This document shows, one piece after another, positions 2,187 to 54,466 of a stretch of DNA of 64,000 bases. The notes below the pieces were generated by a model. It searched no databases and was not told the origin of the DNA. It saw only the letters and a list, made by a program, of their open reading frames with translations. The position numbers were made by a program, and so were the translations under genes. Origin of the DNA: Blepharisma stoltei ATCC 30299 (lineage: Eukaryota; Protista; Ciliophora); NCBI GenBank assembly GCA_965603825.1, contig CBFDEM010000023.1, forward strand, positions 496,001 through 560,000. The letters are read 5' to 3'. Position 1 is the first letter of the stretch. The number at the start of each line of letters is the position of its first letter.

Positions 2187-3422
2187 ATGTTAAGACAACT
2201 GCCATACAGATTTCACCCATCCACAAAGACTCACAGCCTAATTCAAAAAGCTTTAAATTCTACCTTTTATTTAGTCCAAGAGCTTGGCCCTACCTCTTTT
2301 TTACTAAAAGATGACAATAAAATATCCTACCGAGTGAGTATTGGGAGTACAGTTCAATGCTCTTGCAGAAAAACCTCACCAGACCATTGTATTCATACTC
2401 TCTATGTTCTTCTTAAAATTTTCAAACTCAATCCTTATAATCCACTTCTATGGCAACTCAGTTTCATCGACTCAGAAATCAATTGGATTCTAAATAACAG
2501 ACAATGTATTAGTTTTGACTCAATTGAAGAAACGTGAAGTAAAGCTAAAGAAATATCTAAACGAGTAAAATTAAACACTGAATGCTGCTCAATTTGCCAA
2601 GAAGAAATGAAATCCGCTGATGATCTTGTATATTGCAAGAATGGCTGTGGGCACAATTTTCATATAAAATGTATGAAAATATGGGCAGACCACAAAATAT
2701 CGAATGATGAAATAGTTACTTGCCCTATGTGTAGAGCTGAATGGAAGCTTGCGACTTTACAAAAGCCTGACCCACTTCCAATCTCAGAGTTAAAGCAAAA
2801 AATTAAGCATAATCCTGATTCATGATGTGAAGGCTGTGGAAAATGCCCAATTCGAAATGAAAAGTTTAAGTGTTTGGCTTGCCCCGAGATTTATTTATGC
2901 TTGCGATGCTTCTATATAGAGCATATAGATCATCCAATGTTGAGAAAGCGGTCATATAAGCATAGGTGAGAGCCTGCGTTTCGGCCTGGAGAAAAAGAAT
3001 GTGACCTTGAAACATATATTATGAAAGCTGTTCCTAGTGCTGAAGGCTGAGAGTGTATAATTTGTAAAGATAGAGCAGAGTGTGATTGAAAGATATTTTT
3101 GTGTGGCCACACAGCACATGAATGCTGTTTAATCATAAATTTAAGAAATCATCAATATCTCTGTCCTGAAGATGACTCATTGATTCTGTCTGGGCTAGAT
3201 ATTGAATATTATAAGCCGAAGAAAAATAGAGAAAACTGTAGTGTTAGAAATAATAAAAGAAATAGAGGTGATAGTGTCCCGACAACTAGGAAAATTTTCA
3301 GAAATCCTCCCACAACCTGAAATCGATCTAGAAGGATAGATGAGAGTTTTCAGCTTCCTTCTTTGATTATTACCAAATTTGAAAGAGACCTTAACGCATT
3401 GAATTTAAGTTCATTAATATAA
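2187..3422 (+). CDS. ZSWIM2: SWIM-RING-ZZ-RING E3 ubiquitin ligase (ZSWIM2/MEX-like), ~411 aa
   Basis: One frame with 6 TGA(Trp). SWIM CSC..HCIH; RING CSICQEEM..CKNGCGHNFHIKC..W..CPMCR; ZZ CEGC..CPI..KCLAC..LCLRCF..H..H; second RING-like CIIC..CGHTAHECC..CP. Confidence 0.8.
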
Positions 3423-3445
3423 ACTGCAATTTTTCCAAAAAATAC

Positions 3446-5065
3446 TTATAGTGAATTAAGTATGGCAAGCTTAGCTTTAATTGCACCAATATAGACTTCA
3501 TTAACTTTCTCGTTCATTTCGATCTTATTTAAATTGCTTGAATCAATTCCTACAAATAAATTTTCATAGCTTTTGGCTTTTTCCTCTGCTTTATTTGCAA
3601 TTTCTCTAATAAGGGAAATTTTTTCAGGCTTCAAAATATTTTTGTTGGAAATGATCGGCTTCCATTCGATTTGTGCAATTTTTTCAGGACCTAAGATTTT
3701 GCTAATTTTTTCTCTAACTTTTCTTCTTTCATTTAAATAGTCTACAGATTTATCAATGGGAGGAGATTTTTCTTCTGCTTTTTTCATATTAGTACTGTTT
3801 GGTGAACTGATTCCTTTTGAAATACTTCGATTGCTCATTGATTTTGTCCTGCTATGTCTTAATAGATTTTTCGCTTTTCCTTTATTTTCATCAGAAATTG
3901 ACAGACTGTCGTTGATTTCACTATTAGAGTAGGAAGATTCTTTAGAATCCAGATTAATACGTTTAAAATGGCTTTCATCTAAGCTCTTATGTAGTCTCCG
4001 GTTATTGTGTTTCTTTTGTAGTAATAAAATTTCATTTTGTTTAGCAATTGAAATCGAAGGCTTAAATAGCTCAATTGCTAGGTCTCCATACATTCTTGAC
4101 CTTTTAGCAAGCTCTTTTCTCATTTTTATTTTTTCAAGCTCATTAATCTGCTTTTCTTTTTCCTCAATTTTAGCTTTTTCGAAAGCTTCAGACCGGTAAT
4201 AATTAATGCTTGCCTCTTGTAAAGAAAACTCATTCAATTTGTGCCTTACTTTCAATTCTCTTCTTCCTTCCTGCTCCTTTTTTTGTCTTAAATAATTTCT
4301 TTCATGACTTTGCAAAGCTTCATAATCAATTGACAGCCAATTCCTTCTTCTTTTTTCCATCATTTCTTTATGCTTATCAATTTCCGGAAAAATGGATTGA
4401 TTTAAAAAATTTTCTTCCATTTGCTTGTACATCGGCTTTGCTTCATATACTCTTTTGAGTTCTTTGTCTCCTATTTCTAATAACTCTTGCCTTTGTTTTC
4501 TCTGATTTTCAACTTTTTCTCGAATTCTGTCAAGTCTTTGTTGCCTTTTATCGATGAAACTCTTTTGCAATTCTTCTTCAGCGATTTTATCTAATCTCAT
4601 TTGATTGAAAAGCTTTTCCTCCATGGATTTTACGAATTCTTCACGGGATTTAGTGGATTTTTCTCTTTCTTTTTGCATTCTTTTGATAAAATTTACTCTT
4701 TCGGCGTCGTCAACTTGTTTGATAAATGAACGAATTGATTTTGATCTAAACGGTATTGAGGTCAGGGATTTGTATTCTTGATCAACGAATTTTAATTTTG
4801 TTTCGAGCTCTTCTTTGGCCTGTTTCATTAATTTTAACTTATGTTGTGATAGCTGAACTTCATAGTTGTTTTTGTGAGACATCTGATTGATTTCTTCAGA
4901 TAAATCCAATGGCGAATTTGCTAATTTAAACTTGTTTGGAGAAGATATCATAGATGCAGCTGCATTATCAATCGTCATAATTACCTGAGTTGCTGTTTCT
5001 TTATATTTAGCGATCAAACTATTAAGAGTCAGAGAAAGATAGCCAATAACTGGCTTTTCTCCCAT
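3446..5065 (-). CDS. coiled-coil hypothetical protein (539 aa)
   Basis: Long uninterrupted ORF with E/K/R/Q-rich heptad character. Confidence 0.75.
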   Translation of the reverse strand: MGEKPVIGYLSLTLNSLIAKYKETATQVIMTIDNAAASMISSPNKFKLANSPLDLSEEINQMSHKNNYEVQLSQHKLKLMKQAKEELETKLKFVDQEYKSLTSIPFRSKSIRSFIKQVDDAERVNFIKRMQKEREKSTKSREEFVKSMEEKLFNQMRLDKIAEEELQKSFIDKRQQRLDRIREKVENQRKQRQELLEIGDKELKRVYEAKPMYKQMEENFLNQSIFPEIDKHKEMMEKRRRNWLSIDYEALQSHERNYLRQKKEQEGRRELKVRHKLNEFSLQEASINYYRSEAFEKAKIEEKEKQINELEKIKMRKELAKRSRMYGDLAIELFKPSISIAKQNEILLLQKKHNNRRLHKSLDESHFKRINLDSKESSYSNSEINDSLSISDENKGKAKNLLRHSRTKSMSNRSISKGISSPNSTNMKKAEEKSPPIDKSVDYLNERRKVREKISKILGPEKIAQIEWKPIISNKNILKPEKISLIREIANKAEEKAKSYENLFVGIDSSNLNKIEMNEKVNEVYIGAIKAKLAILNSL

Positions 5066-5409
5066 TATTTCTATAAGTGCTTAAAAATTAATTTTTTTAC
5101 TTTTTATAAATTGTTTGTGTTGTAAGGAATTAGTTTAGAAAATCTAAGAATCAGGGGCCCAACTTTCCTTGTTGATCTAGCCGAATTCTCTTGAAAAATA
5201 TTCTGATTAATTGAAAAAGAAGCTAATAATTACTATTTATTAGCTCTCTAATTTAGCTCGACAGCAAGTTAGCTTTAAAATTTCATCTTCAAATAGGATA
5301 AGCCACTCATTGGATATATTTTATCTCTTTCTTTTATATAATTTTTATGGCTTAAATTTTTTATAGAGCTGCATTAATTTATTTATCCTAAAATCTGATT
5401 ATAAATAAA

Positions 5410-33994: not shown

Positions 33995-36826
33995 TTAAGA
34001 GGTGTATAAATACTTAGGAATTTTTTCGGATTCCTCATCTTTCATAAGGCTTGCTTCAAGATCTTCTGCTGGGATGTCATCAATTTTGCATTGCCAATCT
34101 TCATGACCCTCAATTATGTGCTGCTCAACTATTTCTTGAGTAGGATTGATATTAGGCTGGCTTTTTACTCTCGATATAGCACTAAGGCTTGGCTTAGGGA
34201 TTTCAACTGACTCTAAGTCCCATATATCTTCAGCATACTCGTGGATTGTGCGATCACTTGAAAACCTTCCCATATTAAGCGCTCCAGTTATAGACATTTT
34301 TAACCATCGGTCTTGATTCTTATATACCGCATCAGCTTCTTCTTGTTTTTCTATATAAGAATAAAAATCAGATTTCACAAGATAAATATCATGCTGCTCC
34401 AGGGATTCTACAAGAGATGATAGTTCTTTAGGATTCCCAAAAGTTCCACTTTTAATAGCATCAAAAATTCTTTGCAGGCGGCTTCCAGCTGGTGCTCCAC
34501 TCTGTACTCGAAGTCTATCAACTTCATGTACTCTTGCCCCAAATATAAAGGCATTCTGAATTCCAATATCTTCTACAATTTCTACATTGGCTCCATCCAT
34601 GGTTCCCATAATAATGGCCCCATTCATCACAAACTTCATATTACTTGTCCCTGAAGCTTCAGTACCAGCAGTCGAAATTTGTTCAGTCAGATCAGCAGCT
34701 GGGATGATGATTTGTGCACTGGACACACAATAGTTAGGAAGGAAAACGACTTTCATTAGATCTCCTATATCAGGATCATTGTTAACAACGTCTCCAATGC
34801 TATTAATAAGTTTTATGATCTTTTTGGCAGCAATATACCCAGGTGCTGCCTTTCCACCGACCATGAAAACTCTTTTGACTTGTTTTGCTCTGTCATCAAC
34901 TGTCATGGCTTTAAGGTTAAAGTAGCGATAAATCATGTACAAAGCGAACAAGTTTTGCCGTTTATATTCGTGGATTCTTTTGACCATAATATCAAACATC
35001 GCGTCAGTTGGGATTTTAATTCCACACTCCTTTTCTACCCATTTTGCGAGTCTTTCCTTGTTTTGCAGCTTGGCTTGTCTGAACTCTTCTTGGAATTCTT
35101 CATTATCGATGTAGCTCATTAAGTTTTTAGTTTCATACAGATCTGAAAGCCAGTTATTAGACTTGAGATATTTGGTGTAGATATCTGACAGTCCTTTATT
35201 TGAACATTTTATCCATCGTCTAGGAGTGACTCCATTTGTCTTATTTTGGAATTTTTTAGGGAAATATTCGTGGAATCTTGCAAAGAGCTGAGTTTTAAGC
35301 AGGTTGGAATGGAGAGCTGCGACTCCATTGACTGCATGGGAGCTGACAATACAAAGATTAGCCATACGGACTGCTTTAGGTCTCGACTCTTCAATAAGTG
35401 ACATATACCCCATGATATCAAATTTCTTAGGGTCATTGGCATATCTTTGGCCAACTTGGTTCATAAAGTGGAAATTAATCAAATAAATGATTTCTAAATG
35501 TCTTGGAAGAAGTCTTTCGAACAGCTCAACACTCCATTTCTCCAAAGCTTCTGGCATCACTGTATGATTTGTGTAGCTGAACACTTTATAACAGATATTC
35601 CAAGCCCTTTGCCACTCAAGACCATATTTATCTACTAAAACTCTCAAAAGTTCTGGAATTGATATGGCTGGATGAGTGTCGTTTAATTGAATGGCAACTT
35701 TATCAGGCAGTTCTTCCCACTCTCTTGGCTTTTTTAAAAATCTTCTAATTATATCTTGAATAGTAGCGCAACAGAAGAAATATTGCTGCCTTAGTCTCAG
35801 CTCTTTGCCGCTAGGTGTAGAGTCATTTGGATAAAGAACTGATGTAATGTATTCAGCTTTCTGTCTGGTTTCAATTGCTTTGAAGTAGTCACCTTGATTA
35901 AAGCTTTGGAAATCAAATTCATTAGTAGGCATGGACTTCCACAATCTTAAATTAATAGTGTTAAAAGTGTCGTACCCAGGAATTGGGTTATCATAAGCAA
36001 TTGCTTTGACAATCTCATTTGGAATCCAATTCGATTTTTCAATGCCATTTTCCCACTTCTTTTCTACTCTTCCGCCAAAATAAATATCATAAGTTACATC
36101 AGACCTCTCAATTTCCCAAGGATTCATCTGTGCTAGCCAATAATCTGGCATTTCCACTTGGTATCCTTTGACAATCATTTGTCGGAAAATCCCATAGTCA
36201 TATCGAATTCCATAACCCCAGGCTGGGTAGTCTAAGGTAGCCAAAGAGTCTAAAAAGCATGATGCAAGCCTTCCAAGGCCTCCATTGCCAAGCCCAGGGT
36301 CGACTTCTTCATCATAAAGTTCTTCAAGTTTATATCCAACTTCTTCTAGAGCTTCTCTATATTTATCTTCTAATCCTAAATTAATCAAGGCATTTTGCAT
36401 TGATCTGCCAATAAGGAATTCAATTGACATGTAGTAAACTCTTTTTTTGTCCTCTGCTGTAAACAGCTGCTGGGTGTCGTTCCAGCTTTCAATTAGTCTA
36501 TCTCTGATGGAAAGAGCTGCAGCTTTAAAGCAAGAATTCTTATCAAAATTGAAACGAGTTCGAGCCAGCGTGTATTCTACATGGGCTACGATTGCTTTTT
36601 GGATTGTTGACTTCTCAGTATCTATATATTCTGCCATCAACTCCCAAAGTTTTTCACTGGTTGCTTCTCCTCTTGAAGCAGAATCAAATTCAGGACGATA
36701 CAACTTTTGAGAACCCAGCTCAACTCTAGATGAATGTCTACTGCCTCTTCTATGAAGGCCAGAATTCTCTTCGCCTTCACCTGAGAACACTCCTGAGCTG
36801 TAATGCTTGATTGGTTGTTCCTCCAT
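33995..36826 (-). CDS. PYG: glycogen phosphorylase (GT35)
   Basis: GLGNGGLGRLASCFLDSLATL; IQLNDTHP; YTNHT; KTNGVTPRRW; VKRIHEYKRQ; PLP-lysine motif EASGTSNMKF. Start placed at the second Met (36826); 36856 also possible. Confidence 0.96.
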   Translation of the reverse strand: MEEQPIKHYSSGVFSGEGEENSGLHRRGSRHSSRVELGSQKLYRPEFDSASRGEATSEKLWELMAEYIDTEKSTIQKAIVAHVEYTLARTRFNFDKNSCFKAAALSIRDRLIESWNDTQQLFTAEDKKRVYYMSIEFLIGRSMQNALINLGLEDKYREALEEVGYKLEELYDEEVDPGLGNGGLGRLASCFLDSLATLDYPAWGYGIRYDYGIFRQMIVKGYQVEMPDYWLAQMNPWEIERSDVTYDIYFGGRVEKKWENGIEKSNWIPNEIVKAIAYDNPIPGYDTFNTINLRLWKSMPTNEFDFQSFNQGDYFKAIETRQKAEYITSVLYPNDSTPSGKELRLRQQYFFCCATIQDIIRRFLKKPREWEELPDKVAIQLNDTHPAISIPELLRVLVDKYGLEWQRAWNICYKVFSYTNHTVMPEALEKWSVELFERLLPRHLEIIYLINFHFMNQVGQRYANDPKKFDIMGYMSLIEESRPKAVRMANLCIVSSHAVNGVAALHSNLLKTQLFARFHEYFPKKFQNKTNGVTPRRWIKCSNKGLSDIYTKYLKSNNWLSDLYETKNLMSYIDNEEFQEEFRQAKLQNKERLAKWVEKECGIKIPTDAMFDIMVKRIHEYKRQNLFALYMIYRYFNLKAMTVDDRAKQVKRVFMVGGKAAPGYIAAKKIIKLINSIGDVVNNDPDIGDLMKVVFLPNYCVSSAQIIIPAADLTEQISTAGTEASGTSNMKFVMNGAIIMGTMDGANVEIVEDIGIQNAFIFGARVHEVDRLRVQSGAPAGSRLQRIFDAIKSGTFGNPKELSSLVESLEQHDIYLVKSDFYSYIEKQEEADAVYKNQDRWLKMSITGALNMGRFSSDRTIHEYAEDIWDLESVEIPKPSLSAISRVKSQPNINPTQEIVEQHIIEGHEDWQCKIDDIPAEDLEASLMKDEESEKIPKYLYTS

Positions 36827-36972
36827 TATTTTATAGCCAATATATGTAACATACAAATTGCCAAAGATGGTGCAAAAGATGAAGATATTATTTTAACTCT
36901 AAATTATGAAAACTTTGTAAAAATAAATTTTATGTATAAAAAATACAAAAATGCGATAAAATGTATATTGGA

Positions 36973-38439: not shown

Positions 38440-38688
38440 TAAAAAAATACTTTTATCTGCAGTTCATGTTTTTTTAGAAACCAATTTTTAATTCAGTATA
38501 ACTTATTAATATATTTCCAAAATAAGCGTTTTAAATGTATATTTATATACGTGCCAGCTTCGAAGATAATTTGATAACTCAAACGTAAATAAATAAACGC
38601 TGAAATATGCTATTTACCCAAATTGTTCCTTCTATACTTACTAATTTAATTAATTTTCAGTCCCGCCATTATAATAAATAACCCGGGA

Positions 38689-41600
38689 ATGAGAAAAAAT
38701 AGACAAGCAGCCCTTGCCCAGCTCAAAGAAGCAAAGCACGGACAAAAGAAAAGAACGGAACAATATGAAGTCCAGGAAGAAGCCGATATCCTTGTAAACG
38801 TAACAGAAGAAGAGTACCAAGAAATGAAGAAAAAGCAAGGAAACAGCAAATTCATAACTAATGATTTTGGCATAGGCTATGATGATCATGGAGAACTTGA
38901 TTACCAAGATGAAGAAGAAGACCCATATGAAGAGGAAGAGGAAAACCTCAAAAAACCAAAAATTGAAAGCAAATCAATTACGACTTTTATGAAGCCCGGA
39001 GTAAGTATGAAACCAAAAGGACCGAAAAAGGCAGAAAGTGTTGAAGCTTCTAAGATTATGGACGATCTTTTAGGGATGATGGATGATGATTCAATTAACC
39101 CTGAAGAAGTCTTGTCAATGGGAAATGCAGTTCAAAAGCCTAAAACTTTTGCAGTCAATAAAGGTACTACACAGACTCACGCTATGGAAGAAGCTTTAAG
39201 GCAAAGATATAACAAACCAACAGTAGCTAAAAAGCCAGCTAACGAAAGCAGACCATTAGAAGAAGTCAAAAAATCACTTTCTGAAATAATAAAAAACGAA
39301 GAAAACAATAAAGAAGAGGAAGAGAAGTTTGAGATGAGAAAGAGAAAAAGAGCAGGCGATATTCTCCCTGCAAAAATTACGACTCCTAAAAAAGTTGATG
39401 AAGTTTATGTCCATCCTGAAGAGCCTACTTTTGAAATGGAAGAAGTTCATAACGTGCCTGAGCCAATTACAATTACAGCGCCTATTGAAGAGACAAAAAT
39501 GGAAATAGAGCCAGTAGTCGAATCAAAAGTAGAAATGGCTTTAGAAGAAAACGGCAACACTAACATTGAGTTTCAAGCTCTTGAAACTGAACTGCCATTT
39601 GAATCAAACTCAGCCAAATATCTCCCTATTGAAAATGGAAATCTCCACGTTTACTGGTATGACGCAATTGAAGATAAAGAACTATTGCCTGGAAGTGTCT
39701 TCATTTTTGGAAAAGTCTCCAATATAGAGACCAAGCGGTTTGAAAGCATCTGTGTTATCGTACAAGAGATGCAGAGGAATCTCTTTGTCCTACCAAGAGA
39801 AGAATACAAAGATCAGCCTGGAGAAGTTTATCAAGAGCTTGAAGAAATCCGTAAGAAATGCGGGATCAATAAATGAATGTGCAAGCCAATTGAGAGGAAA
39901 TATGCATTTGAGTTCCCAGATGTCCCGCCTAAAAGCAGCTATATGAAAGTCCAATACAGTTCAAAATTGCCACCACTTAACGAAAAATATTTTAAAGGAA
40001 AAACGTTTTCCCACATTTTTGGGGCTGGGTCAAGCTTAATTGAACTTTTATTAGTAAAGCGTAAACTTAGAGGACCTTGCTGGATGAAGCTAAAAGATGT
40101 GCAGATCGCTAAAAATAAATGCTCCCACTGCAAGCATGAAATTGTGATTGCGGGTCCTAAACAAATAGAGTTTACAGCTGATGAGGCAAATTTGATTCCT
40201 CCGCCTTTAACTGTCCTTTCGCTAGCTTTAAAAAGTGTAAGAAATTCAAAAGGTCTTGAAATTTGTGCAATTTCTGGTGTCGCTCATTCACAAATTGATC
40301 AAGTTCAGCCTACTCCTTATAATCTTAATACAGTGAATGCTTTTTCTATAGTCAAAAAAGTCGGTCCAGCTGTGGCTTCTAAAAATCCAACAATTGAGGT
40401 GGTTGAGTCAGAAAAAGTGCTCCTTAATAGCTTTCTAGCCAAAATGATTCGGATTGATGCAGATGTAATTGTTGCTCATGAGCTCCTAGGGAACTTTTTA
40501 GATATTTTGATAAGCAGACTTCAAGCTTTGAAAGTCTCAAATTGGTCTCGCATGGGCAGATTGTCAAGAAATAGGTATTCAAGCCAAAAAAAAGATGATG
40601 CATTTGGAGGAAATTGGCTATACAGATCAACGACATCAGGAAGATTATTATGTGATACCTTTTTATCTACAAAAGAACTTTCAAAACAAACCACTTATAC
40701 TTTAACTCATCTTGTTAAACAGATACTTAAAAAAGATAGGCAAGAAATAATTGATGTTGAAAATTTATTAAATTCAGTTCAAGGAGTTGAAAGATTAGCT
40801 AAACATACACAACAAGACGCGTATTTTAATTTTGAGATTACAATGCATTTATCAGTAATTCCACTTACCAAACAGCTGACTAATATAGCAGGGAACTTAT
40901 GGTATCGGTCTTTTCTAAATCAAAGAGCTGAACGTAATGAAATGCTACTTATACATGAATTCCACAAAAATAAATTTGTATGGCCCGACAAGGCTATCAA
41001 AAAAACTGAAGAAGTTGGAAAGAAAAATAAAAAAAAGTATTTAGGAGGTCTCGTTCTTGAGCCTAAGTCAGGTCTCTATGATAAATTCATATTGCTTTTA
41101 GATTTCAATTCACTATATCCTTCTCTGATTCAAGAATATAATATTTGTTTTACTACAGTAACAAGAAATAAAGGAGTAGAAGATGATAATGAGCCAGGTG
41201 GCCTTCCATCAGAAAAAGAAACAAGAGGGATTTTGCCTGACATTATCCGTGATCTTGTTGCAAGAAGAAAAGCCACAAGAAGTTTAATGAAGAATGAAAC
41301 TGATAAAATTAAGCTAGAGCAGCTTGAAATTAAACAAAAAGCTTTAAAGCTAACAGCAAACTCTATGTATGGCTGTCTTGGTTTCACACAGTCAAGATTT
41401 TATGCTAAGCCAATAGCTGCTTTAATTACGATGATGGGTCGTCAAACCTTAGAAAATGCTGTAAAAATCGCAAAGGATAAGCTAGGGCTTGACGTCATTT
41501 ATGGAGACACTGATTCTATTATGATAAACACAAACCTCTCTGATATGAACAAAAGTCTTGAAATTGGAAATACATTGAAAAAAATAATCAATAAGCAATT

Positions 41601-42726
41601 TAAATGTTTGGAAATTGAAATTGATGGGCTCTTCAAATGCATGCTATTACTTAAGAAGAAAAAATATGCATGCATGAAGCTTGTTGGTAACGAATTTGTA
41701 AGAGAAGTAAAAGGGCTTGATATGGTAAGAAGAGATTGGTGTCCGATATCTAAATTTGTGTCAAGTGGGGCTCTTGATATTTTACTCTCTGGACAAAATA
41801 GCGAAGATATTGTAGCAAATTTGAGGGAGTTTGTTGAGGGGGTTTATAGCAAACTACAAAAAGAAGAGTATCCATTATCTGAATACATCATAACTAAACA
41901 ATTAACAAAAGCGCCTGAAAAATATAAGGATGGAAAATCACAGCCTCATGTACAAGTTGCCTTAAAATTAAAAGAGCGAGGTGAGAGAAATCTAGAAGGG
42001 CAGTTTATTCCATATGTAATTTGCCAAGAAGAAGCTACATCTTATGCAGAAAGAGCTAAACACCCTGATGATTTTATCAGTTCAGCTGGAGCATTAAAAA
42101 TAGACTTTACATGGTACATAACCCAGCAGATTCTTCCACCATTGCATCGTTTGTGTAGCGTAATAGATTCAGTGACTTCTGGTGAAATTGCCACTTGGAT
42201 GGGTCAAGATCCAAGTAAATATAATACCTCCAGTACTGAAACGACTCATTCATATGTAAATTTAAGAGGAGCAGATAAACTCACTATAATTTGTTATGGG
42301 TGCGCTAATAGGTATGAAGCTACTGAAAACTCATTCGGATGCAAAACTTGCACAAAAAGCGGACAAATAAATCAGGTTAAAAACTCAGTAACAAGAATGA
42401 TGAGAGAAAAAATGATGAAATATTACACAGCTGAACGAAAATGCAATGAACAGACATGTGGATGGAAAACCAAACAAATTGAAACAAACTGCAAAATTAA
42501 GGCATGCAAAGGAATAATGATCTCAGACTACTCAGTTGTGCAACTTCATGAACAATTGTATTATTTACTAGATTTATTTACAAAAGGGTGCAAAATAGAT
42601 CAAAAGAGCTATCAAGAAATTGCTATGAAACTAGAAAATGTATTGAGAAGGAGTGGGTATCAAAGAATTGAGCTTAAAAACTTTGTATGCTCGAAGCCAA
42701 ACTTAGCAAGCATAATTGATATTTAA
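38689..42726 (+). CDS. POLA1: DNA polymerase alpha catalytic subunit (~1345 aa)
   Basis: N-terminal DFGIGYDDHG; YWYDA; RKYAFE; LLDFNSLYPSLIQEYNICFTT; KLTANSMYGCLG; YGDTDS; C-terminal Cys motifs; one TGA(Trp) at 39874. Confidence 0.96.
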
Positions 42727-45755: not shown

Positions 45756-48359
45756 TTAAAAATCTGAAAGCTTAAGCAATTTTTGCTTGTTCTTACCAAG
45801 CCATCTTTTAGCTTTCATAACTACAAGATCCCACAAACACTTATAGTCTTTACATTTTTCTTCAAGCAATGCAACAACCAAAGCTGTAGTCGATTTCTCA
45901 TTAAATTTAAAAATATCGACATAGTAATCAAGCAAATTATTCACAATATCTGATAAGTTTGCAGAAGTTTCCCAATACCCATCAGTGTTTTGTAGATGCA
46001 TTATTTTTTCAACTTCATATCCAACGTCAATGCATTTTACCTCATTTTTTTTCTGGGGTTGCTTAGGCAAATTTTTAGCTTCAGATTTTTCTATTTTCGC
46101 CTTTTTTTGAGGAGGAATTACTTTGGCTTGCTTGCCTCTTCCTCTTTTGGCTTGTAAGACAACTTCTGTTGATTTAGAAGCACTTCGAGTTCTAGGAGTA
46201 GCTGCTGAAGGTGTTGAAACTTTAGTAGATGATGAGCTTCTAGGAGTTGTAGATCTTCGAGGGATAGATTTTTTAGCAGTTCTTTTAGCTTGAGGCTTAA
46301 TTTGAGCAGGAGTGGCTCTCCCTGACCTAGTTTTTCCTCGTTTAGGACTTGCTTGCTGATTTTGCCCTGCTTGCTGGACATCAATTACTGCTTCTTGCAT
46401 ATCCCCAGGTCTGACAGTCATTCTTTTATGATTTGCAGAAGCATTAACTGAAGCCTTGAACACGTCAACAATATATGCTTCAGCTGCTTCATGAAACGCC
46501 TGAAAAGCTTCTTTTTGGAATCTCATGTCAGGAATGGTATCATTACTAATAGTCCGGACAATATTTTTGAATTTTGTTTTGGGGATTAATAAATCTGTTG
46601 AATTTTGGTATTTTTTTATTTCTCTTTCTGCAAGCTTCCCTGGTCTAAGCCTAAATGGCTTTTTTATACCAATAGTAGGAGCTATAGTTCTTGCGTTTGA
46701 TACTTTTTTCTTGGGAGCCGCTTTAGGCTTCACTTCTGGTGGCAAGTCAGTTTTTTGGTATTTTTCAGCATCAAATGAGGTATATTCGCCTTCAACTTGA
46801 TATTCTTTGGATTTTTTAATGGATTCTGCTTTATCACATCGCTTCAAATATTCTTTGGCTTCTAGCACAAGAATTGAGCTTGAAGTTACTATTTGTCCGT
46901 CAATAATAGGCAGTTCTATATCTTTTGAGCCCAGTTTTTCGCTTTGAAATTGCAGAGTGATGCTTTTGGGGAGTTTCCCTTTCTTAAAAACTCCTGAAAT
47001 TTCAATCTTTTCATTTGAAAAAACACTGAATGGGTCTCTTGGCCAAACAAAATCAAATGGTTTATAGTCTGCCAGCTTAATATCGGTAATGGCAGAGACT
47101 AAAACTTGTTTCAGCGAGCTTAAAATGGCTGGCTTTATTTGATTAATGCTCTTTATTTGCTGAGAAGTGCCATTGCCCATTTTTGCAAGATTATCAATAA
47201 ATGCTTGATCTGTATCAATACCAATAGTGCTGATTTTGACATCTTTATGCTTCCCTATTAACTTCTTAAATTCCTCTAAGCTGTCCCACACATTTCCATC
47301 AGTTACAACAAAGACGCTTAAAGGGTACCCAGGGATTCTGTTGCCTTCTATAACATATTTTAAAGGCTCAAAAAGGTTGGTTCCTCCCATGTTGCTATTA
47401 TACTGAAGAACGACTCTATGTGCTTCATCAGCTGAGCATTTATCATATTTTTTACTTTTTTTAAACATTGCCTCGTAGCTACTTCCAAAGCTTACAACAT
47501 TGAAGTAGCAGTTTTCAGGTAGTGAGCGAATAAATAGTGCTACAGCTTCTGTTGCTAGTTGTATTCTGCTGCACATTGATCCACTTCTGTCTAGCAATAT
47601 AATGAATTCTCCAATCTGTGCTGCTCCACTTGAATCTAAAAGCTCTTCGTCTGGCTTGTAGGATAAATAAAAAGCATGCCTATTTGTACCTTCGTCTTTT
47701 TGAACAATAATAAATGGCTCATTAGGAATTTCTTGATAATAAGTTACTTCAATATCATTTTCAGGGCTAAAATTCATAAAATTTACCTTGTGGCGATTTT
47801 TATCAAGTGTCACTGAATTCCCATTTTTGACATTGACCTCACCTTTTTGTTTTCTTGATTCATTTCCCCAAATTGTAGTGATTTCTGCAGAGCAAGGAAC
47901 ATTTTCAAGTTTATTTGGAAATAGAGCTTTAGGGATTATGAATTTTCAAAAGTTCTCTGGAATTATCTGCTCTGATTTGCAGACATAAGTAGCATCAATT
48001 TTTATTTCTGACCCCTCTGCAACTTCTCCAATATCAAAAACCATCATGTCAAAGTCACCCAACTTTTTTAGCAGAAAATCACTTTCACCTGCATTTTTTG
48101 CGTCTTGGTAAGATTTTAGAGGCTTATTAGGCTCTTGAATGTTAAATATATGCGAGTTATCGCCTTTTACTATTTTGAGTTCAGATAGGTGTATGTCGGA
48201 AATGATCGGAAAAACGTATTTTGCATCGATTGATGCATTAGAATTGTTGGAATAAAACTGTACTAAAGTAAATTCAGCATAATTGTAATTAAGCTCACCA
48301 TCAATGTGAAATTCGGTGCACTCAAGGTGAACATTGTTGAAGCCAACTAAAGAAGACAT
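45756..48359 (-). CDS. VIT-vWA (VWA5A-like) protein with an embedded histone H3 fold and basic linker, ~867 aa
   Basis: VIT (AEFTLVQFYSN..IDAKYVFP); TGA(Trp) at 47946; vWA with MIDAS LLDRSGSM, FNVVSFGS, MGGT, VTDG; H3-like KKPFRLRPGKLAEREIKKYQNSTDLLI..MRFQ..EAAEAY..KRMTVRPGDMQ; C-terminal LQNTDGYW..TTAL..WDLVVMKAKRWL. Confidence 0.9.
46386..46724 (-). other. histone H3-like domain inside the VIT-vWA protein
   Basis: Ungapped manual alignment to canonical H3 residues 36-127 gives 44/92 identities; upstream KAAPKKKVSNARTIAPTIGI resembles H3 tail residues 14-35. Confidence 0.92.
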
Positions 48360-51337: not shown

Positions 51338-52276
51338 ATGGAACTTCCTAAAGTTGAAGGACCTCACGATGGGCGGGATATCTCATATAACTATTTCTAC
51401 AAGCAATGCGAAGACTTAAACGAAATTGAAGAAGGGATCCCTGTCTCCTCTTTTACCAACCTTTCCAAAATGCGAAATAAAGATCTTGAATTCAGGTTAA
51501 TGCGAAAAATCACCGAAACCAAGAAGCATATGGAGTTTTTAGTCCAAAATACTCCAAAGCTTCAAGGCTTAAACAGATATTCAGATATCCTTCCTTTCCA
51601 GGACACAATTGTTTCACTAGAAAGTGGCGATTATATCAATGCTGACTGGATAAAACATCCTATGCCAGACCATAAGCTTTTTATAGCAACACAAGGCCCT
51701 CTAGAATCCACAAGGGATTCTTTTTGGCGAATGATATGGGAATATAATGTAAGTCTTATCGTAATGATATCAGCCATAAGAGAAGCTGGAAAAGTTAAAT
51801 GTGACCAATATTTCCCCATAGGAGACTCTATAGAGCTACCGAATTTTGTGATAACTCTTGTAAGCTCAGAAACTCCTTTTCCTTCTATAACCGCTCGGGT
51901 TTTCCAAATCACCCACAAAGCGACGATGGAGACCAGGACAGTGTCTCATTTACAATCAGTTGCATGGCCAGACCATGGGACACCTGAGCTTGAAGATGAA
52001 TTTGACTCCATTGATTACCTTTTAAACTCCTTAGAATCTCATAAAGAAAAGCATGTCGTTATCCATTGCAGCGCTGGGATTGGTAGGACAGGCACTCTTA
52101 TAGCTCTTTTCCAAATGGTCCAGACCATCAAACTTATGAAAGAAGATGCAAGAATCAGCGTCTTCGGCACAGTCAGAAGACTCCGTGAGCAGCGCTGGGG
52201 AATGGTCCAAACCAAAGACCAATACGACTTTTTGTATAGATTTATGGACGAGTGGATCAATAAATATCATAATTAG
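51338..52276 (+). CDS. classical protein tyrosine phosphatase
   Basis: NRYSDILP; DYINA; FIATQGP; FWRMIWE; KCDQY; WPDHG; HCSAGIGRTG; MVQTKDQY. Confidence 0.95.
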   Translation: MELPKVEGPHDGRDISYNYFYKQCEDLNEIEEGIPVSSFTNLSKMRNKDLEFRLMRKITETKKHMEFLVQNTPKLQGLNRYSDILPFQDTIVSLESGDYINADWIKHPMPDHKLFIATQGPLESTRDSFWRMIWEYNVSLIVMISAIREAGKVKCDQYFPIGDSIELPNFVITLVSSETPFPSITARVFQITHKATMETRTVSHLQSVAWPDHGTPELEDEFDSIDYLLNSLESHKEKHVVIHCSAGIGRTGTLIALFQMVQTIKLMKEDARISVFGTVRRLREQRWGMVQTKDQYDFLYRFMDEWINKYHN

Positions 52277-52294
52277 CTTAATTTATTTGATATA

Positions 52295-54466
52295 ATGGTA
52301 AAAAGTGCAGTTAAAGTTGTAGTGCGCACACGTCCAACAGCCAGTTTTGCATCTAAAAATCTTCAAATAGACCTAGATCAAAAAACAATAGAAGCGTTTA
52401 TCCCTAAAGATAACACCCAAGGCCTCATAAACAACCAGCAAGAGCACTGGAAGTTTCAGTTTGATGAAATTTTGCATAACTCCTCACAAGAAGATGTGTA
52501 TGATATATGCGGCCGAGAAGTCGTGCACAGTGTTTCTGAAGGCTATAATGGGACCATTCTAGCATACGGCCAAACTGGGGCTGGGAAAACTTATACCATG
52601 CTTGGAGGGCAGCAGGCTTATAAGTTTCGAGGCGTCATTCCTAGAGCGATTTCTCAACTTTTCCATGAAGTCCAGAGCAAGCCAGAATTAAGTTATGTGA
52701 TAAGGGTAAGTTATGCAGAAATTTACAATGAGCTTATATATGATTTGATTTCGCCAACCCCACCATCAGACCAAAGTGGCTCAATCATGATCCAAGATGA
52801 TCCAAAATATGGAATTACACTGAGAGGGCTATCACAAAGCATTGTAAACACTGAAGAAGAAGCATTAAACCAGCTGTTTGAAGGTGAAACAAACCGTACT
52901 ATTGCTGCACATCTACTTAATAAAAACTCTACAAGATCCCATTGTGTCTATACAGTCCATTTAGAAAGCAGAAGCAGGGTGGAGTCAAGCGAAAAAGTGA
53001 CCATTTCAAAGCTGAATTTAGTTGATTTGGCTGGGTCAGAAAGGACTAAAAAAACAGGCTCAGAAGGACTTACACTGACTGAAGCAAATTATATTAATAA
53101 ATCTTTGAGCTATTTGGAACAAGTAGTTATCGCATTGTCAGAGAGAGGCAGAGAGCATGTCCCATATAGGCAGTCAAAGCTGACATATATGCTAAAAGAC
53201 TCAATTGGAGGAAACTCAAAAACTCTGATGGTCGCAAATATATGGCCTGAGCCTAACCATATGGAAGAAACGATTTCTACCTTAAGATTTGCCACTCGCA
53301 TGATGCGTGTCTCAAATGAAGCCACAATTAATGTAGAACTTGACCCTGCACAACTGATTGAAAGATATAAAAGAGAAATAAGAGACCTAAAACAAGAGCT
53401 TGCAATGCACGATACATTGGCAAATCGTGGAAGAATTGTATATGAGCCTTATACTCCTGAGCAGCAATACCAGCAGCAGCAAATTGCAGAGAGTTTTCTT
53501 GATGGGGACACAGATGAGGTCGAATTTGACAGTTTAAGGCAGGTTAGAGAACTTTTTATCCAGATGAGAAATATATATAGAAGAGCGTTATCAAGGCTTG
53601 GGGCTTCAGATTTCAAGGTGAGAGCTGATAAAGAAGTAGACCGCTCTGGGTCTTCGCATCCAAAAGAACCAAAAAACATTGAAGAGTCTGATGAAGGACT
53701 TGGAGATGAAGAAAATTTTGGAGGGTTCGGCTTAGGACGAGCTAATCCTAACGCCAAACCAATGGACACATCTGCACTTGAGCCTCGAACTCACTTTATG
53801 CAAGCTGAAGAAGAAGAAATCAACATCAACAAATCTATATCATTTGAAGAAAACAAGAAAAAATCATCAGGATCTCAAAGAAAGCAGCCAATTGACAAAA
53901 ACCAAGCATTTATGGAGTTTAAAAACGTTGACGGAAGAGATATAAATAACGCCCTAAACCAAAACAGAGAAGACCACAAAGATAGAAAAGCAAGGCTTAA
54001 AGAAGTGGGAGCCAGGATTAATAGAATTAAATCAGAAATAGACGAATGCAAAGAAAAAGTAGAGCAGATTAGGAGAAATAAACCAAGCGAAGAAGAAGAT
54101 GTAATTGATGAAGAGGAGTTTGAGTATATAAAAAGATTAAAAGATTTAAAGAAAGTGTATAGAACTGAATATGATCAGATGAAAAATTTGAAAGAAGAAG
54201 TCAATATGATTGCACAAAGCATTGAATTTTCGAGAGAAAGGCTGATTAATGAGTTTGAAACGTGGTATGAAAGAAAATTCGGAGGGGCTACGATGGCACT
54301 GTCAAGAGAAAACTTTGGAACTTTGTCAGAAATGCCAGCTAATATGGAAGGAATTGAAGAAATTGATGATGTAGATCCTGATGCACTGGCGTTTATTAAG
54401 GCGAAGAATAATGTTAAAACACTCCATAAAGCGAAGAAGGCTTTAGGAAGTACACTTAAAAAATAA
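52295..54466 (+). CDS. kinesin-9 family motor (KIF9/KIF6/KLP1-like)
   Basis: AYGQTGAGKT; NKNSTRSH; LVDLAGSER; HVPYRQSKLT; family-typical LINNQQEHWKFQFD and LKQELAMHDTL. Confidence 0.9.
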   Translation: MVKSAVKVVVRTRPTASFASKNLQIDLDQKTIEAFIPKDNTQGLINNQQEHWKFQFDEILHNSSQEDVYDICGREVVHSVSEGYNGTILAYGQTGAGKTYTMLGGQQAYKFRGVIPRAISQLFHEVQSKPELSYVIRVSYAEIYNELIYDLISPTPPSDQSGSIMIQDDPKYGITLRGLSQSIVNTEEEALNQLFEGETNRTIAAHLLNKNSTRSHCVYTVHLESRSRVESSEKVTISKLNLVDLAGSERTKKTGSEGLTLTEANYINKSLSYLEQVVIALSERGREHVPYRQSKLTYMLKDSIGGNSKTLMVANIWPEPNHMEETISTLRFATRMMRVSNEATINVELDPAQLIERYKREIRDLKQELAMHDTLANRGRIVYEPYTPEQQYQQQQIAESFLDGDTDEVEFDSLRQVRELFIQMRNIYRRALSRLGASDFKVRADKEVDRSGSSHPKEPKNIEESDEGLGDEENFGGFGLGRANPNAKPMDTSALEPRTHFMQAEEEEININKSISFEENKKKSSGSQRKQPIDKNQAFMEFKNVDGRDINNALNQNREDHKDRKARLKEVGARINRIKSEIDECKEKVEQIRRNKPSEEEDVIDEEEFEYIKRLKDLKKVYRTEYDQMKNLKEEVNMIAQSIEFSRERLINEFETWYERKFGGATMALSRENFGTLSEMPANMEGIEEIDDVDPDALAFIKAKNNVKTLHKAKKALGSTLKK

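What the first reader, a model, noticed from the sequence alone, without database searches (positions are those of the whole stretch)
45756..48359. Histone H3 domain embedded in frame in a VIT-vWA protein
Seen: between the vWA region and the C-terminal domain of a VWA5A-like protein lies ARTIAPTIGIKKPFRLRPGKLAEREIKKYQNSTDLLIPKTKFKNIVRTISNDTIPDMRFQKEAFQAFHEAAEAYIVDVFKASVNASANHKRMTVRPGDMQEA (46386-46694). It aligns without gaps to canonical H3 residues 36-127 with 44/92 identities by hand count, plus a recognisable tail remnant. No stop, intron or frameshift separates it from the flanks, and the host has an intact MIDAS (DRSGS/T/D). Known: VIT-vWA proteins (VWA5A, PARP4, ITIH) are not normally histone-fold proteins, and I recall no described VIT-vWA-H3 fusion. 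Inference: a captured histone repurposed as an H4-binding, chromatin-anchoring or chaperone-decoy module. It could act in ciliate nuclear dimorphism or genome rearrangement, or couple a vWA adaptor to chromatin.
Basis: partly seen in the sequence, partly recalled or inferred. Interest (0 to 1): 0.92.

Follow-up and report, generated by a model that had tools for sequence, protein, structure and literature searches.

The report
Histone H3 inside VIT-vWA protein
A ciliate gene carries a histone H3 core spliced into the floppy middle of an adaptor-like VIT-vWA protein; the fusion is real, kept by selection and shared with two other microbes, and sister genes hold pieces of other essential host proteins at the same spot, which suggests built-in bait, though nothing has been tested.

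Summary
Confirmed. Window 45756-48359 (-) is an intact, unspliced, apparently transcribed Blepharisma stoltei gene (867 aa, UGA=Trp): VIT, vWA with intact MIDAS, gap-free H3 fold (Pfam E 8e-23), basic linker, helical C-terminal domain. The architecture is not undescribed: Singh et al. 2023 (SI) note this gene and its paralogue in passing, untested; this scan also flagged the paralogue (s1-646632). New here: the H3 sits inside the variable linker of a complete VWA5A-like protein. Two uncultured ciliate-like organisms have the same fusion with near-canonical H3 (93% and 83%). In Blepharisma it predates a duplication and was deleted in three paralogues. All 7 allelic differences are synonymous. 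This copy keeps the H4-facing residues (19/21) but lost the H3-H3' bundle (3/10; H113N, L126E), so it could pair with H4 but not build nucleosomes. Relatives carry an eIF5A hypusine loop or ubiquitin in the same linker. Best reading (0.4): an integrated bait, as in the ITIH4 bait-and-MIDAS trap. Rivals: histone/chromatin tether (0.33), tolerated passenger (0.2). It is not a CenH3 substitute; short CenH3-like genes exist. No link to nuclear dimorphism was found.

The parts
45756..48359 (-). Whole gene, 867 aa VWA5A-like protein with internal histone H3 fold
   Evidence: identical protein on record as P0001; contigs
47985..48317 (-). VIT domain (aa 15-125)
   Evidence: Pfam PF08487 E 1.2e-15
47946..47948 (-). 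TGA read as Trp (codon 138)
   Evidence: aligned to W in the paralogue; Blepharisma code
47160..47609 (-). vWA domain (aa 251-400) with intact MIDAS (DRSGS 47577-47591, T327, D354)
   Evidence: Pfam VWA_3 E 4.6e-24
46755..47102 (-). Second half of the ITIH-like hybrid/VIT domain
   Evidence: AlphaFold pLDDT 80-95; Foldseek best hit ITIH1 6FPY E 5e-28
46671..46754 (-). Basic Pro/Lys linker in the place of the H3 tail; similarity to the tail not significant
   Evidence: 413/1000 shuffles; pLDDT <50
46389..46670 (-). Histone H3 fold, H3 residues 34-127, gap-free; H4 face kept, H3-H3' bundle lost
46026..46388 (-). Disordered basic S/T/P/K/R linker with short NLS-like basic motifs
   Evidence: motif match only
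45759..46025 (-). Helical C-terminal domain of the VWA5A family
   Evidence: pLDDT about 90; family alignment; PMC10539598
48719..51037 (-). Tandem paralogue without the H3 segment and with a degenerate MIDAS (DRNAS)

Best explanation
An intracellular VWA5A/ITIH-type protein carries an integrated bait. SHOWN: a complete VIT-vWA-hybrid core and C-terminal domain (CTD) are joined by a long variable linker, and the H3 fold sits in that linker under purifying selection. Relatives carry other conserved host-protein pieces at the same place. INFERRED: the insert folds by pairing with endogenous H4 as a lone H3-H4 dimer that cannot tetramerise, and so displays histone surfaces on a flexible tether. 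An enzyme or protein that attacks or binds H3-H4 (a protease or modifying effector of an ingested or endosymbiotic microbe or virus, or a host factor) engages or cuts the bait. This loosens the CTD from the vWA domain and lets the Mg2+-MIDAS capture the attacker or signal, as ITIH4 does after cleavage of its variable region. Gain, decay and loss of baits among paralogues would reflect changing targets.
For: Same-site inserts: eIF5A hypusine-loop fragment in the gene next to an H3 fusion (E 1e-9, 78); ubiquitin in a metagenomic VIT-vWA (E 5e-22); seven GLFG-like repeats in the C27 paralogue. Selection: 7/7 allelic differences synonymous, P 2e-5 to 1e-4. All four inserts are gap-free while linkers are gapped. 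The two non-Blepharisma inserts are 81% identical against 44-53% for their scaffold domains, with saturated synonymous sites and dN 0.12. H4 face 19/21 conservative versus bundle 3/10, Fisher p 0.001. Both H3-bearing Blepharisma copies keep MIDAS, while the H3-less tandem copy lost it. Precedents: ITIH4 bait plus MIDAS trap (PMC7793589); predicted CTD-vWA autoinhibition across a disordered loop in Dictyostelium Vwa1 (PMC10539598); the fold's best match is ITIH1.
Against: No attacker, partner or localisation is known. ITIH4 is secreted, and no intracellular VWA5A-like protein is shown to trap anything. H3, ubiquitin and eIF5A are short, abundant genes, so random capture into a tolerant loop predicts the same set. 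The ubiquitin carrier lies in a sister branch. Most linkers inspected hold no recognisable domain. The H3-less C2a copy keeps its MIDAS. The near-canonical inserts with intact bundles look built for real nucleosome chemistry. The interface residue lists come from my knowledge of the nucleosome structure, and the H4 list is mostly hydrophobic core.
Confidence: 0.4

Rival explanations
1. Histone-fold tether, a 'macro-H3'. The insert pairs with H4 to bring the vWA adaptor to chromatin or to the soluble H3-H4 pool: nucleosome-incorporated in the organisms with near-canonical inserts, reduced to an H4-binding or histone-buffering module in Blepharisma.
For: P0006 and P0123 keep H113, C110, D123, L126, I130 and 16/17 DNA contacts plus tail remnants. 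The linkers are basic, with NLS-like motifs in Blepharisma. VWA5A is nucleocytoplasmic. This genome has other histone fusions (TPR-H2B, ARM-H2A).
Against: This copy lost the bundle and several DNA contacts (R63P, R69N, T45K). The gene is weakly expressed. The insert was deleted in three paralogues. The model does not explain eIF5A or ubiquitin at the same site.
Confidence: 0.33
2. Tolerated passenger. Abundant short genes fall into a permissive linker; the H3 supplies only a basic or nuclear-targeting patch, or is kept merely because misfolding is costly, and it decays and is lost over time.
For: Graded decay: 93, 83, 46, 29 identities per 100. dN/dS about 0.5 between the two Blepharisma inserts (dS probably underestimated). 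Repeated deletion. Low expression.
Against: No indels in 100 residues in any of four inserts; face-specific conservation; 3/3 synonymous polymorphisms in the insert (P 0.01-0.02); inserts more conserved than their scaffold in the other lineage.
Confidence: 0.2
3. It is the missing centromeric H3 (CenH3) of Blepharisma.
For: Singh et al. found no CenH3 and these were the only long H3s; Q68 and T107 are replaced, as in many CenH3s.
Against: Loop 1 has canonical length, F84 is kept and the bundle is lost. Two short genes (L011, L013) have a longer loop 1 and W at position 84, and L011's best PDB hits are Cse4 and Cnp1.
Confidence: 0.03
4. Assembly chimera, or two genes read as one.
For: None found.
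Against: Spanning contigs in several runs; one frame; codon-position GC like the host gene; the same architecture in a paralogue and in two unrelated assemblies.
Confidence: 0.01

Closest known systems
The two 'longer histone H3s' with VIT and VWA_3 domains in Blepharisma stoltei (Singh et al. 2023 PNAS SI, PMC9942806)
   Same: This gene is evidently one of the two: only two VIT genes with a histone hit exist in the genome.
   Different: The paper treats them as H3s with N-terminal extras and offers no function. The H3 is in fact an internal insert between hybrid domain and CTD; other species, losses and interface changes were not reported in that passage.
VWA5A/BCSC-1 clade, Dictyostelium Vwa1 (PMC10539598)
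   Same: VIT, vWA with MIDAS, hybrid, disordered loop, helical CTD; no signal peptide evident; VWA5A-like proteins among top named hits.
   Different: The loop holds a histone fold; no other hit in the top 120 outside this subfamily had one.
ITIH4 bait-and-trap inhibitor (PMC7793589)
   Same: VIT-vWA fold (best Foldseek hit ITIH1), MIDAS, variable region C-terminal to the core.
   Different: ITIH4 is secreted and its bait is unstructured; trapping is untested here; about 14% identity to ITIH1.
macroH2A and plant NLR integrated domains (own knowledge)
   Same: A histone fused to a large non-histone module; host-target copies integrated into a sensor scaffold.
   Different: macroH2A is nucleosome-competent with a terminal fusion; NLR-IDs use an NB-ARC switch, absent here.
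CenH3/CENP-A
   Same: Divergent H3 fold with Q68 and T107 replaced.
   Different: No loop 1 extension, F84 kept, tetramer bundle lost.

Membership tests
VWA5A-like intracellular VIT-vWA proteins | VIT followed by vWA domain | tested here: met
VWA5A-like intracellular VIT-vWA proteins | MIDAS DxSxS...T...D | tested here: met
VWA5A-like intracellular VIT-vWA proteins | ITIH-like hybrid core, disordered loop and helical CTD | tested here: met
Histone H3 family (sequence) | Pfam Histone over cut-off, best hits H3, helices aN, a1, a2, a3 in order | tested here: met
Histone H3 family (sequence) | Three-dimensional histone fold | tested here: inconclusive
   Monomer model pLDDT 57, TM about 0.33 to H3; H3 folds only with H4 and no complex could be modelled
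Nucleosomal H3 variant | H3-H3' four-helix bundle (C110, H113, D123, L126, I130) | tested here: not met
   2/10 identical in this copy and in C27; 8-9/10 in the two other organisms
Nucleosomal H3 variant | Modifiable N-terminal tail | tested here: not met
   no free N-terminus; tail similarity not significant
Nucleosomal H3 variant | H4 binding and chromatin incorporation | not testable with these tools
   H4-facing residues are conserved but binding was not tested
CenH3 | Longer loop 1 and loss of F84 | tested here: not met
ITIH4-like bait traps | Variable region after the VIT-vWA core and intact MIDAS | tested here: met
ITIH4-like bait traps | Cleavage- and Mg2+-dependent capture of the attacker | not testable with these tools
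   needs biochemistry

The most novel reading that the evidence does not exclude
Ciliate VWA5A-like proteins are an undescribed intracellular surveillance family that mounts copies of essential host targets (H3 paired with H4, eIF5A hypusine loop, ubiquitin, FG repeats) as exchangeable baits on an ITIH4-like MIDAS trap, the protist counterpart of plant NLR integrated decoys. In the near-canonical members the bait may even enter nucleosomes as a roughly 95-kDa H3 variant.
Probability: 0.3. Interest if true: 0.88.

Novelty: new variant of a known kind. Interest (0 to 1): 0.62.

Why it matters
The function of intracellular VIT-vWA proteins, including the human tumour-suppressor candidate VWA5A, is largely unknown. 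A linker that repeatedly hosts recognisable host-protein copies gives a direct handle on what that linker does. A conserved giant H3 fusion is also very rare: among 1.84 billion cluster representatives, only one of the top 150 hits spanned both parts. The series from near-canonical to tetramer-dead inserts is a natural experiment in turning a core histone into a binding module.

Tried and rejected
A search with the H3 region alone found only the query: too few shared words; the relatives came through the paralogue and P0006. Intron or splicing removal of the insert: no joints in any run; no spliced model was needed or joined. Tail remnant in this copy: not significant. CenH3 substitute: rejected. 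One clade of H3-bearing scaffolds: rejected, p-AU 8e-105, so either one old gain with many losses or at least two gains. BLASTP of the C2a linker against H3 shows no significant remnant; the deletion argument rests on the tree and on 16 shared derived residues, with the short DMQ remnant as a weak extra. The monomer fold of the insert was uninformative. The two metagenomic hosts could not be named; a ciliate origin is inferred only. The metagenome scan found five loci, none with H3. The Atlas returned only plain VIT-vWA clusters. Literature searches found no study beyond the Singh SI passage.

Full report
Observation. The finding is a minus-strand gene, window 45756-48359, 867 codons. One in-frame TGA (codon 138) aligns with Trp in the neighbouring paralogue. 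The genome has 41.46 Mb in 64 contigs and its paralogues are on record as Blepharisma stoltei proteins. Pfam gives VIT, VWA_3 and Histone (E 7.6e-23), the last two in one stop-free frame; the best PDB matches are H3.3 and H3.1. The insert aligns without gaps to H3 34-133, 45/92 identical over 36-127 to the organism's own H3. MIDAS is intact. Contigs from three probable RNA runs and one DNA run show no joint or indel; single contigs span both junctions (X10 45961-47732; X5 45996-47709), and the probable RNA runs leave the flanking spacers uncovered. The claimed tail remnant in this copy is not above chance.

Prior description. The supplement of Singh et al. 2023 (PMC9942806) states that both longer Blepharisma H3s have VIT and VWA_3 domains, that their role is unknown, and that they are the most weakly expressed H3-domain genes. 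The architecture is therefore known in passing but unstudied. This scan also noted the second copy (s1-646632), which I had found independently.

Anatomy. AlphaFold models the VIT-vWA-hybrid core and the C-terminal helical domain at pLDDT mostly 80-95; between them lie disordered stretches and four low-confidence helices at the aN, a1, a2 and a3 positions. The best fold match is ITIH1. This is the layout of Dictyostelium Vwa1 and VWA5A, where a long disordered loop joins the core to a CTD predicted to dock on the vWA domain (PMC10539598). The H3 is thus an insert in that loop, not an H3 with an N-terminal extension.

Distribution and history. Blepharisma has ten VIT genes; two carry H3: this one and C27 (1031 aa, insert 29% identical to H3, preceded by seven GLFG-like repeats). 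Two more fusions turned up in other assemblies: P0006 (JGI 3300045971) and P0123 (SRR25018408), with inserts 93 and 83 per 100 identical to Blepharisma H3 and clear but remodelled tails. Their contigs are gene-dense, 46-51% GC and read in the standard code. An Rrp45 gene from the SRR25018408 assembly scores 307 bits to Blepharisma against 153 to human, so a ciliate, probably heterotrich, origin is inferred but not shown. All four fusions fall in one 14-member subfamily (100/100), but the H3-bearing scaffolds are not a clade (p-AU 8e-105). In Blepharisma, C27 is sister to a group holding this gene and three H3-less copies, and the two inserts share 16 derived residues: one capture before the duplications, then deletion in the tandem neighbour, C2a and C2b. 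Whether the other lineage shares that capture is open; all four share only I119V. Among 1.84 billion cluster representatives, only P0123 of the top 150 hits spanned the whole vWA-plus-H3 profile, so the fusion is rare.

Selection. Seven differences between run contigs and the assembly are all synonymous, three within the insert (P 2e-5 to 1e-4 overall, 0.01-0.02 for the insert). No insert has an indel, while the flanking linkers have several. P0006 versus P0123: insert 81% identical, scaffold domains 44-53%, synonymous sites saturated, dN 0.12. This gene versus C27: dN 0.5, dS about 1.0, i.e. relaxed but constrained.

What the insert can do. Using interface lists from my knowledge of the nucleosome structure, this copy keeps 19/21 H4-facing positions identical or conservative and the E97, R116, D123 set, but only 3/10 of the H3-H3' bundle (C110A, H113N, L126E, I130D; Fisher p 0.001). 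C27 shows the same trend (15/21 vs 3/10, p 0.05). P0006 and P0123 keep both faces. Inference: the Blepharisma insert can form an H3-H4-like dimer but no tetramer or nucleosome. A monomer model could not confirm the fold, as expected for a domain that folds with its partner. It is not the missing CenH3: loop 1 and F84 are canonical, and two short genes elsewhere have CenH3 hallmarks, one with Cse4/Cnp1 as best PDB hits.

The linker as a capture site. In SRR25018408 the VIT-vWA gene 1.5 kb from the H3 fusion carries an eIF5A fragment with the hypusine-site lysine in the same linker. A metagenomic member of the sister branch carries ubiquitin there. A Blepharisma paralogue has two Pol II CTD-like heptads, which may be chance. 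Most linkers inspected show no known domain.

Mechanism. I favour an integrated bait (0.4). ITIH4, on the same fold, is cleaved in a variable region and then holds the protease through its MIDAS (PMC7793589). Here the loop would display an H3(-H4) surface; engagement would release the CTD and allow MIDAS-dependent capture or signalling. Shown: architecture, position, selection, face-specific conservation, other inserts. Inferred: H4 binding, trigger, trap, any defence role. The tether model (0.33) fits the near-canonical members best and is not exclusive. The passenger model (0.2) explains the choice of abundant genes and the losses, but not the constraint.

Verdict. Real, previously mentioned but unexplained, a new variant of the VWA5A-like family.

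Noticed in passing
L011:1477-1845 (G000:C38:313326-313637) and L013 (G000:C30:623100-623420): Short (122-124 aa) divergent H3s with longer loop 1 and W at position 84; L011's best PDB hits are Cse4 and Cnp1. Probably the CenH3 genes that Singh et al. 2023 reported as not observed.
   Followed up: partly
L054:6326-8542 (-), SRR25018408: VIT-vWA gene with an eIF5A hypusine-loop fragment in its linker, one gene away from the H3 fusion.
   Followed up: yes
L058:224-2692 (+), Ga0194116_10036872: VIT-vWA protein with a ubiquitin domain in the same linker (Pfam E 5e-22).
   Followed up: yes
P0123 and P0006, tail remnants: The H3 K9 position reads M in P0123 and apparently L in P0006; K-to-M changes are known methyltransferase inhibitors (own knowledge). 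Two cases only, and the alignment in P0006 is loose.
   Followed up: no
L041:1923-5018 (G000:C27): The second H3 fusion has seven G(L/M)FG repeats, Nup98-like, replacing the end of the hybrid domain before the H3.
   Followed up: partly
L049:1136-2923 (C24) and L050:889-2430 (C39): Other histone fusions in this genome: TPR repeats plus H2B, and an ARM-like region plus an H2A-like fold.
   Followed up: no
L043 about 2950-5400 (-), G000:C2: Paralogue C2b has an in-frame TAA after the vWA domain: a pseudogene, or a short intron not resolved here.
   Followed up: no
L046:2480-5332 (-), G000:C8: VIT-vWA paralogue with two tandem YSP(S/T)SPS heptads like the Pol II CTD in a Pro/Ser-rich linker.
   Followed up: partly
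window 38650-42726, 51338-52276, 52277-54466, 33995-36892: Ordinary neighbours: DNA polymerase alpha, tyrosine phosphatase, KIF9-like kinesin, glycogen phosphorylase; no functional link evident.
   Followed up: yes
P0097: VIT-vWA homologue with C1 and ZZ zinc fingers after the vWA domain.
   Followed up: no
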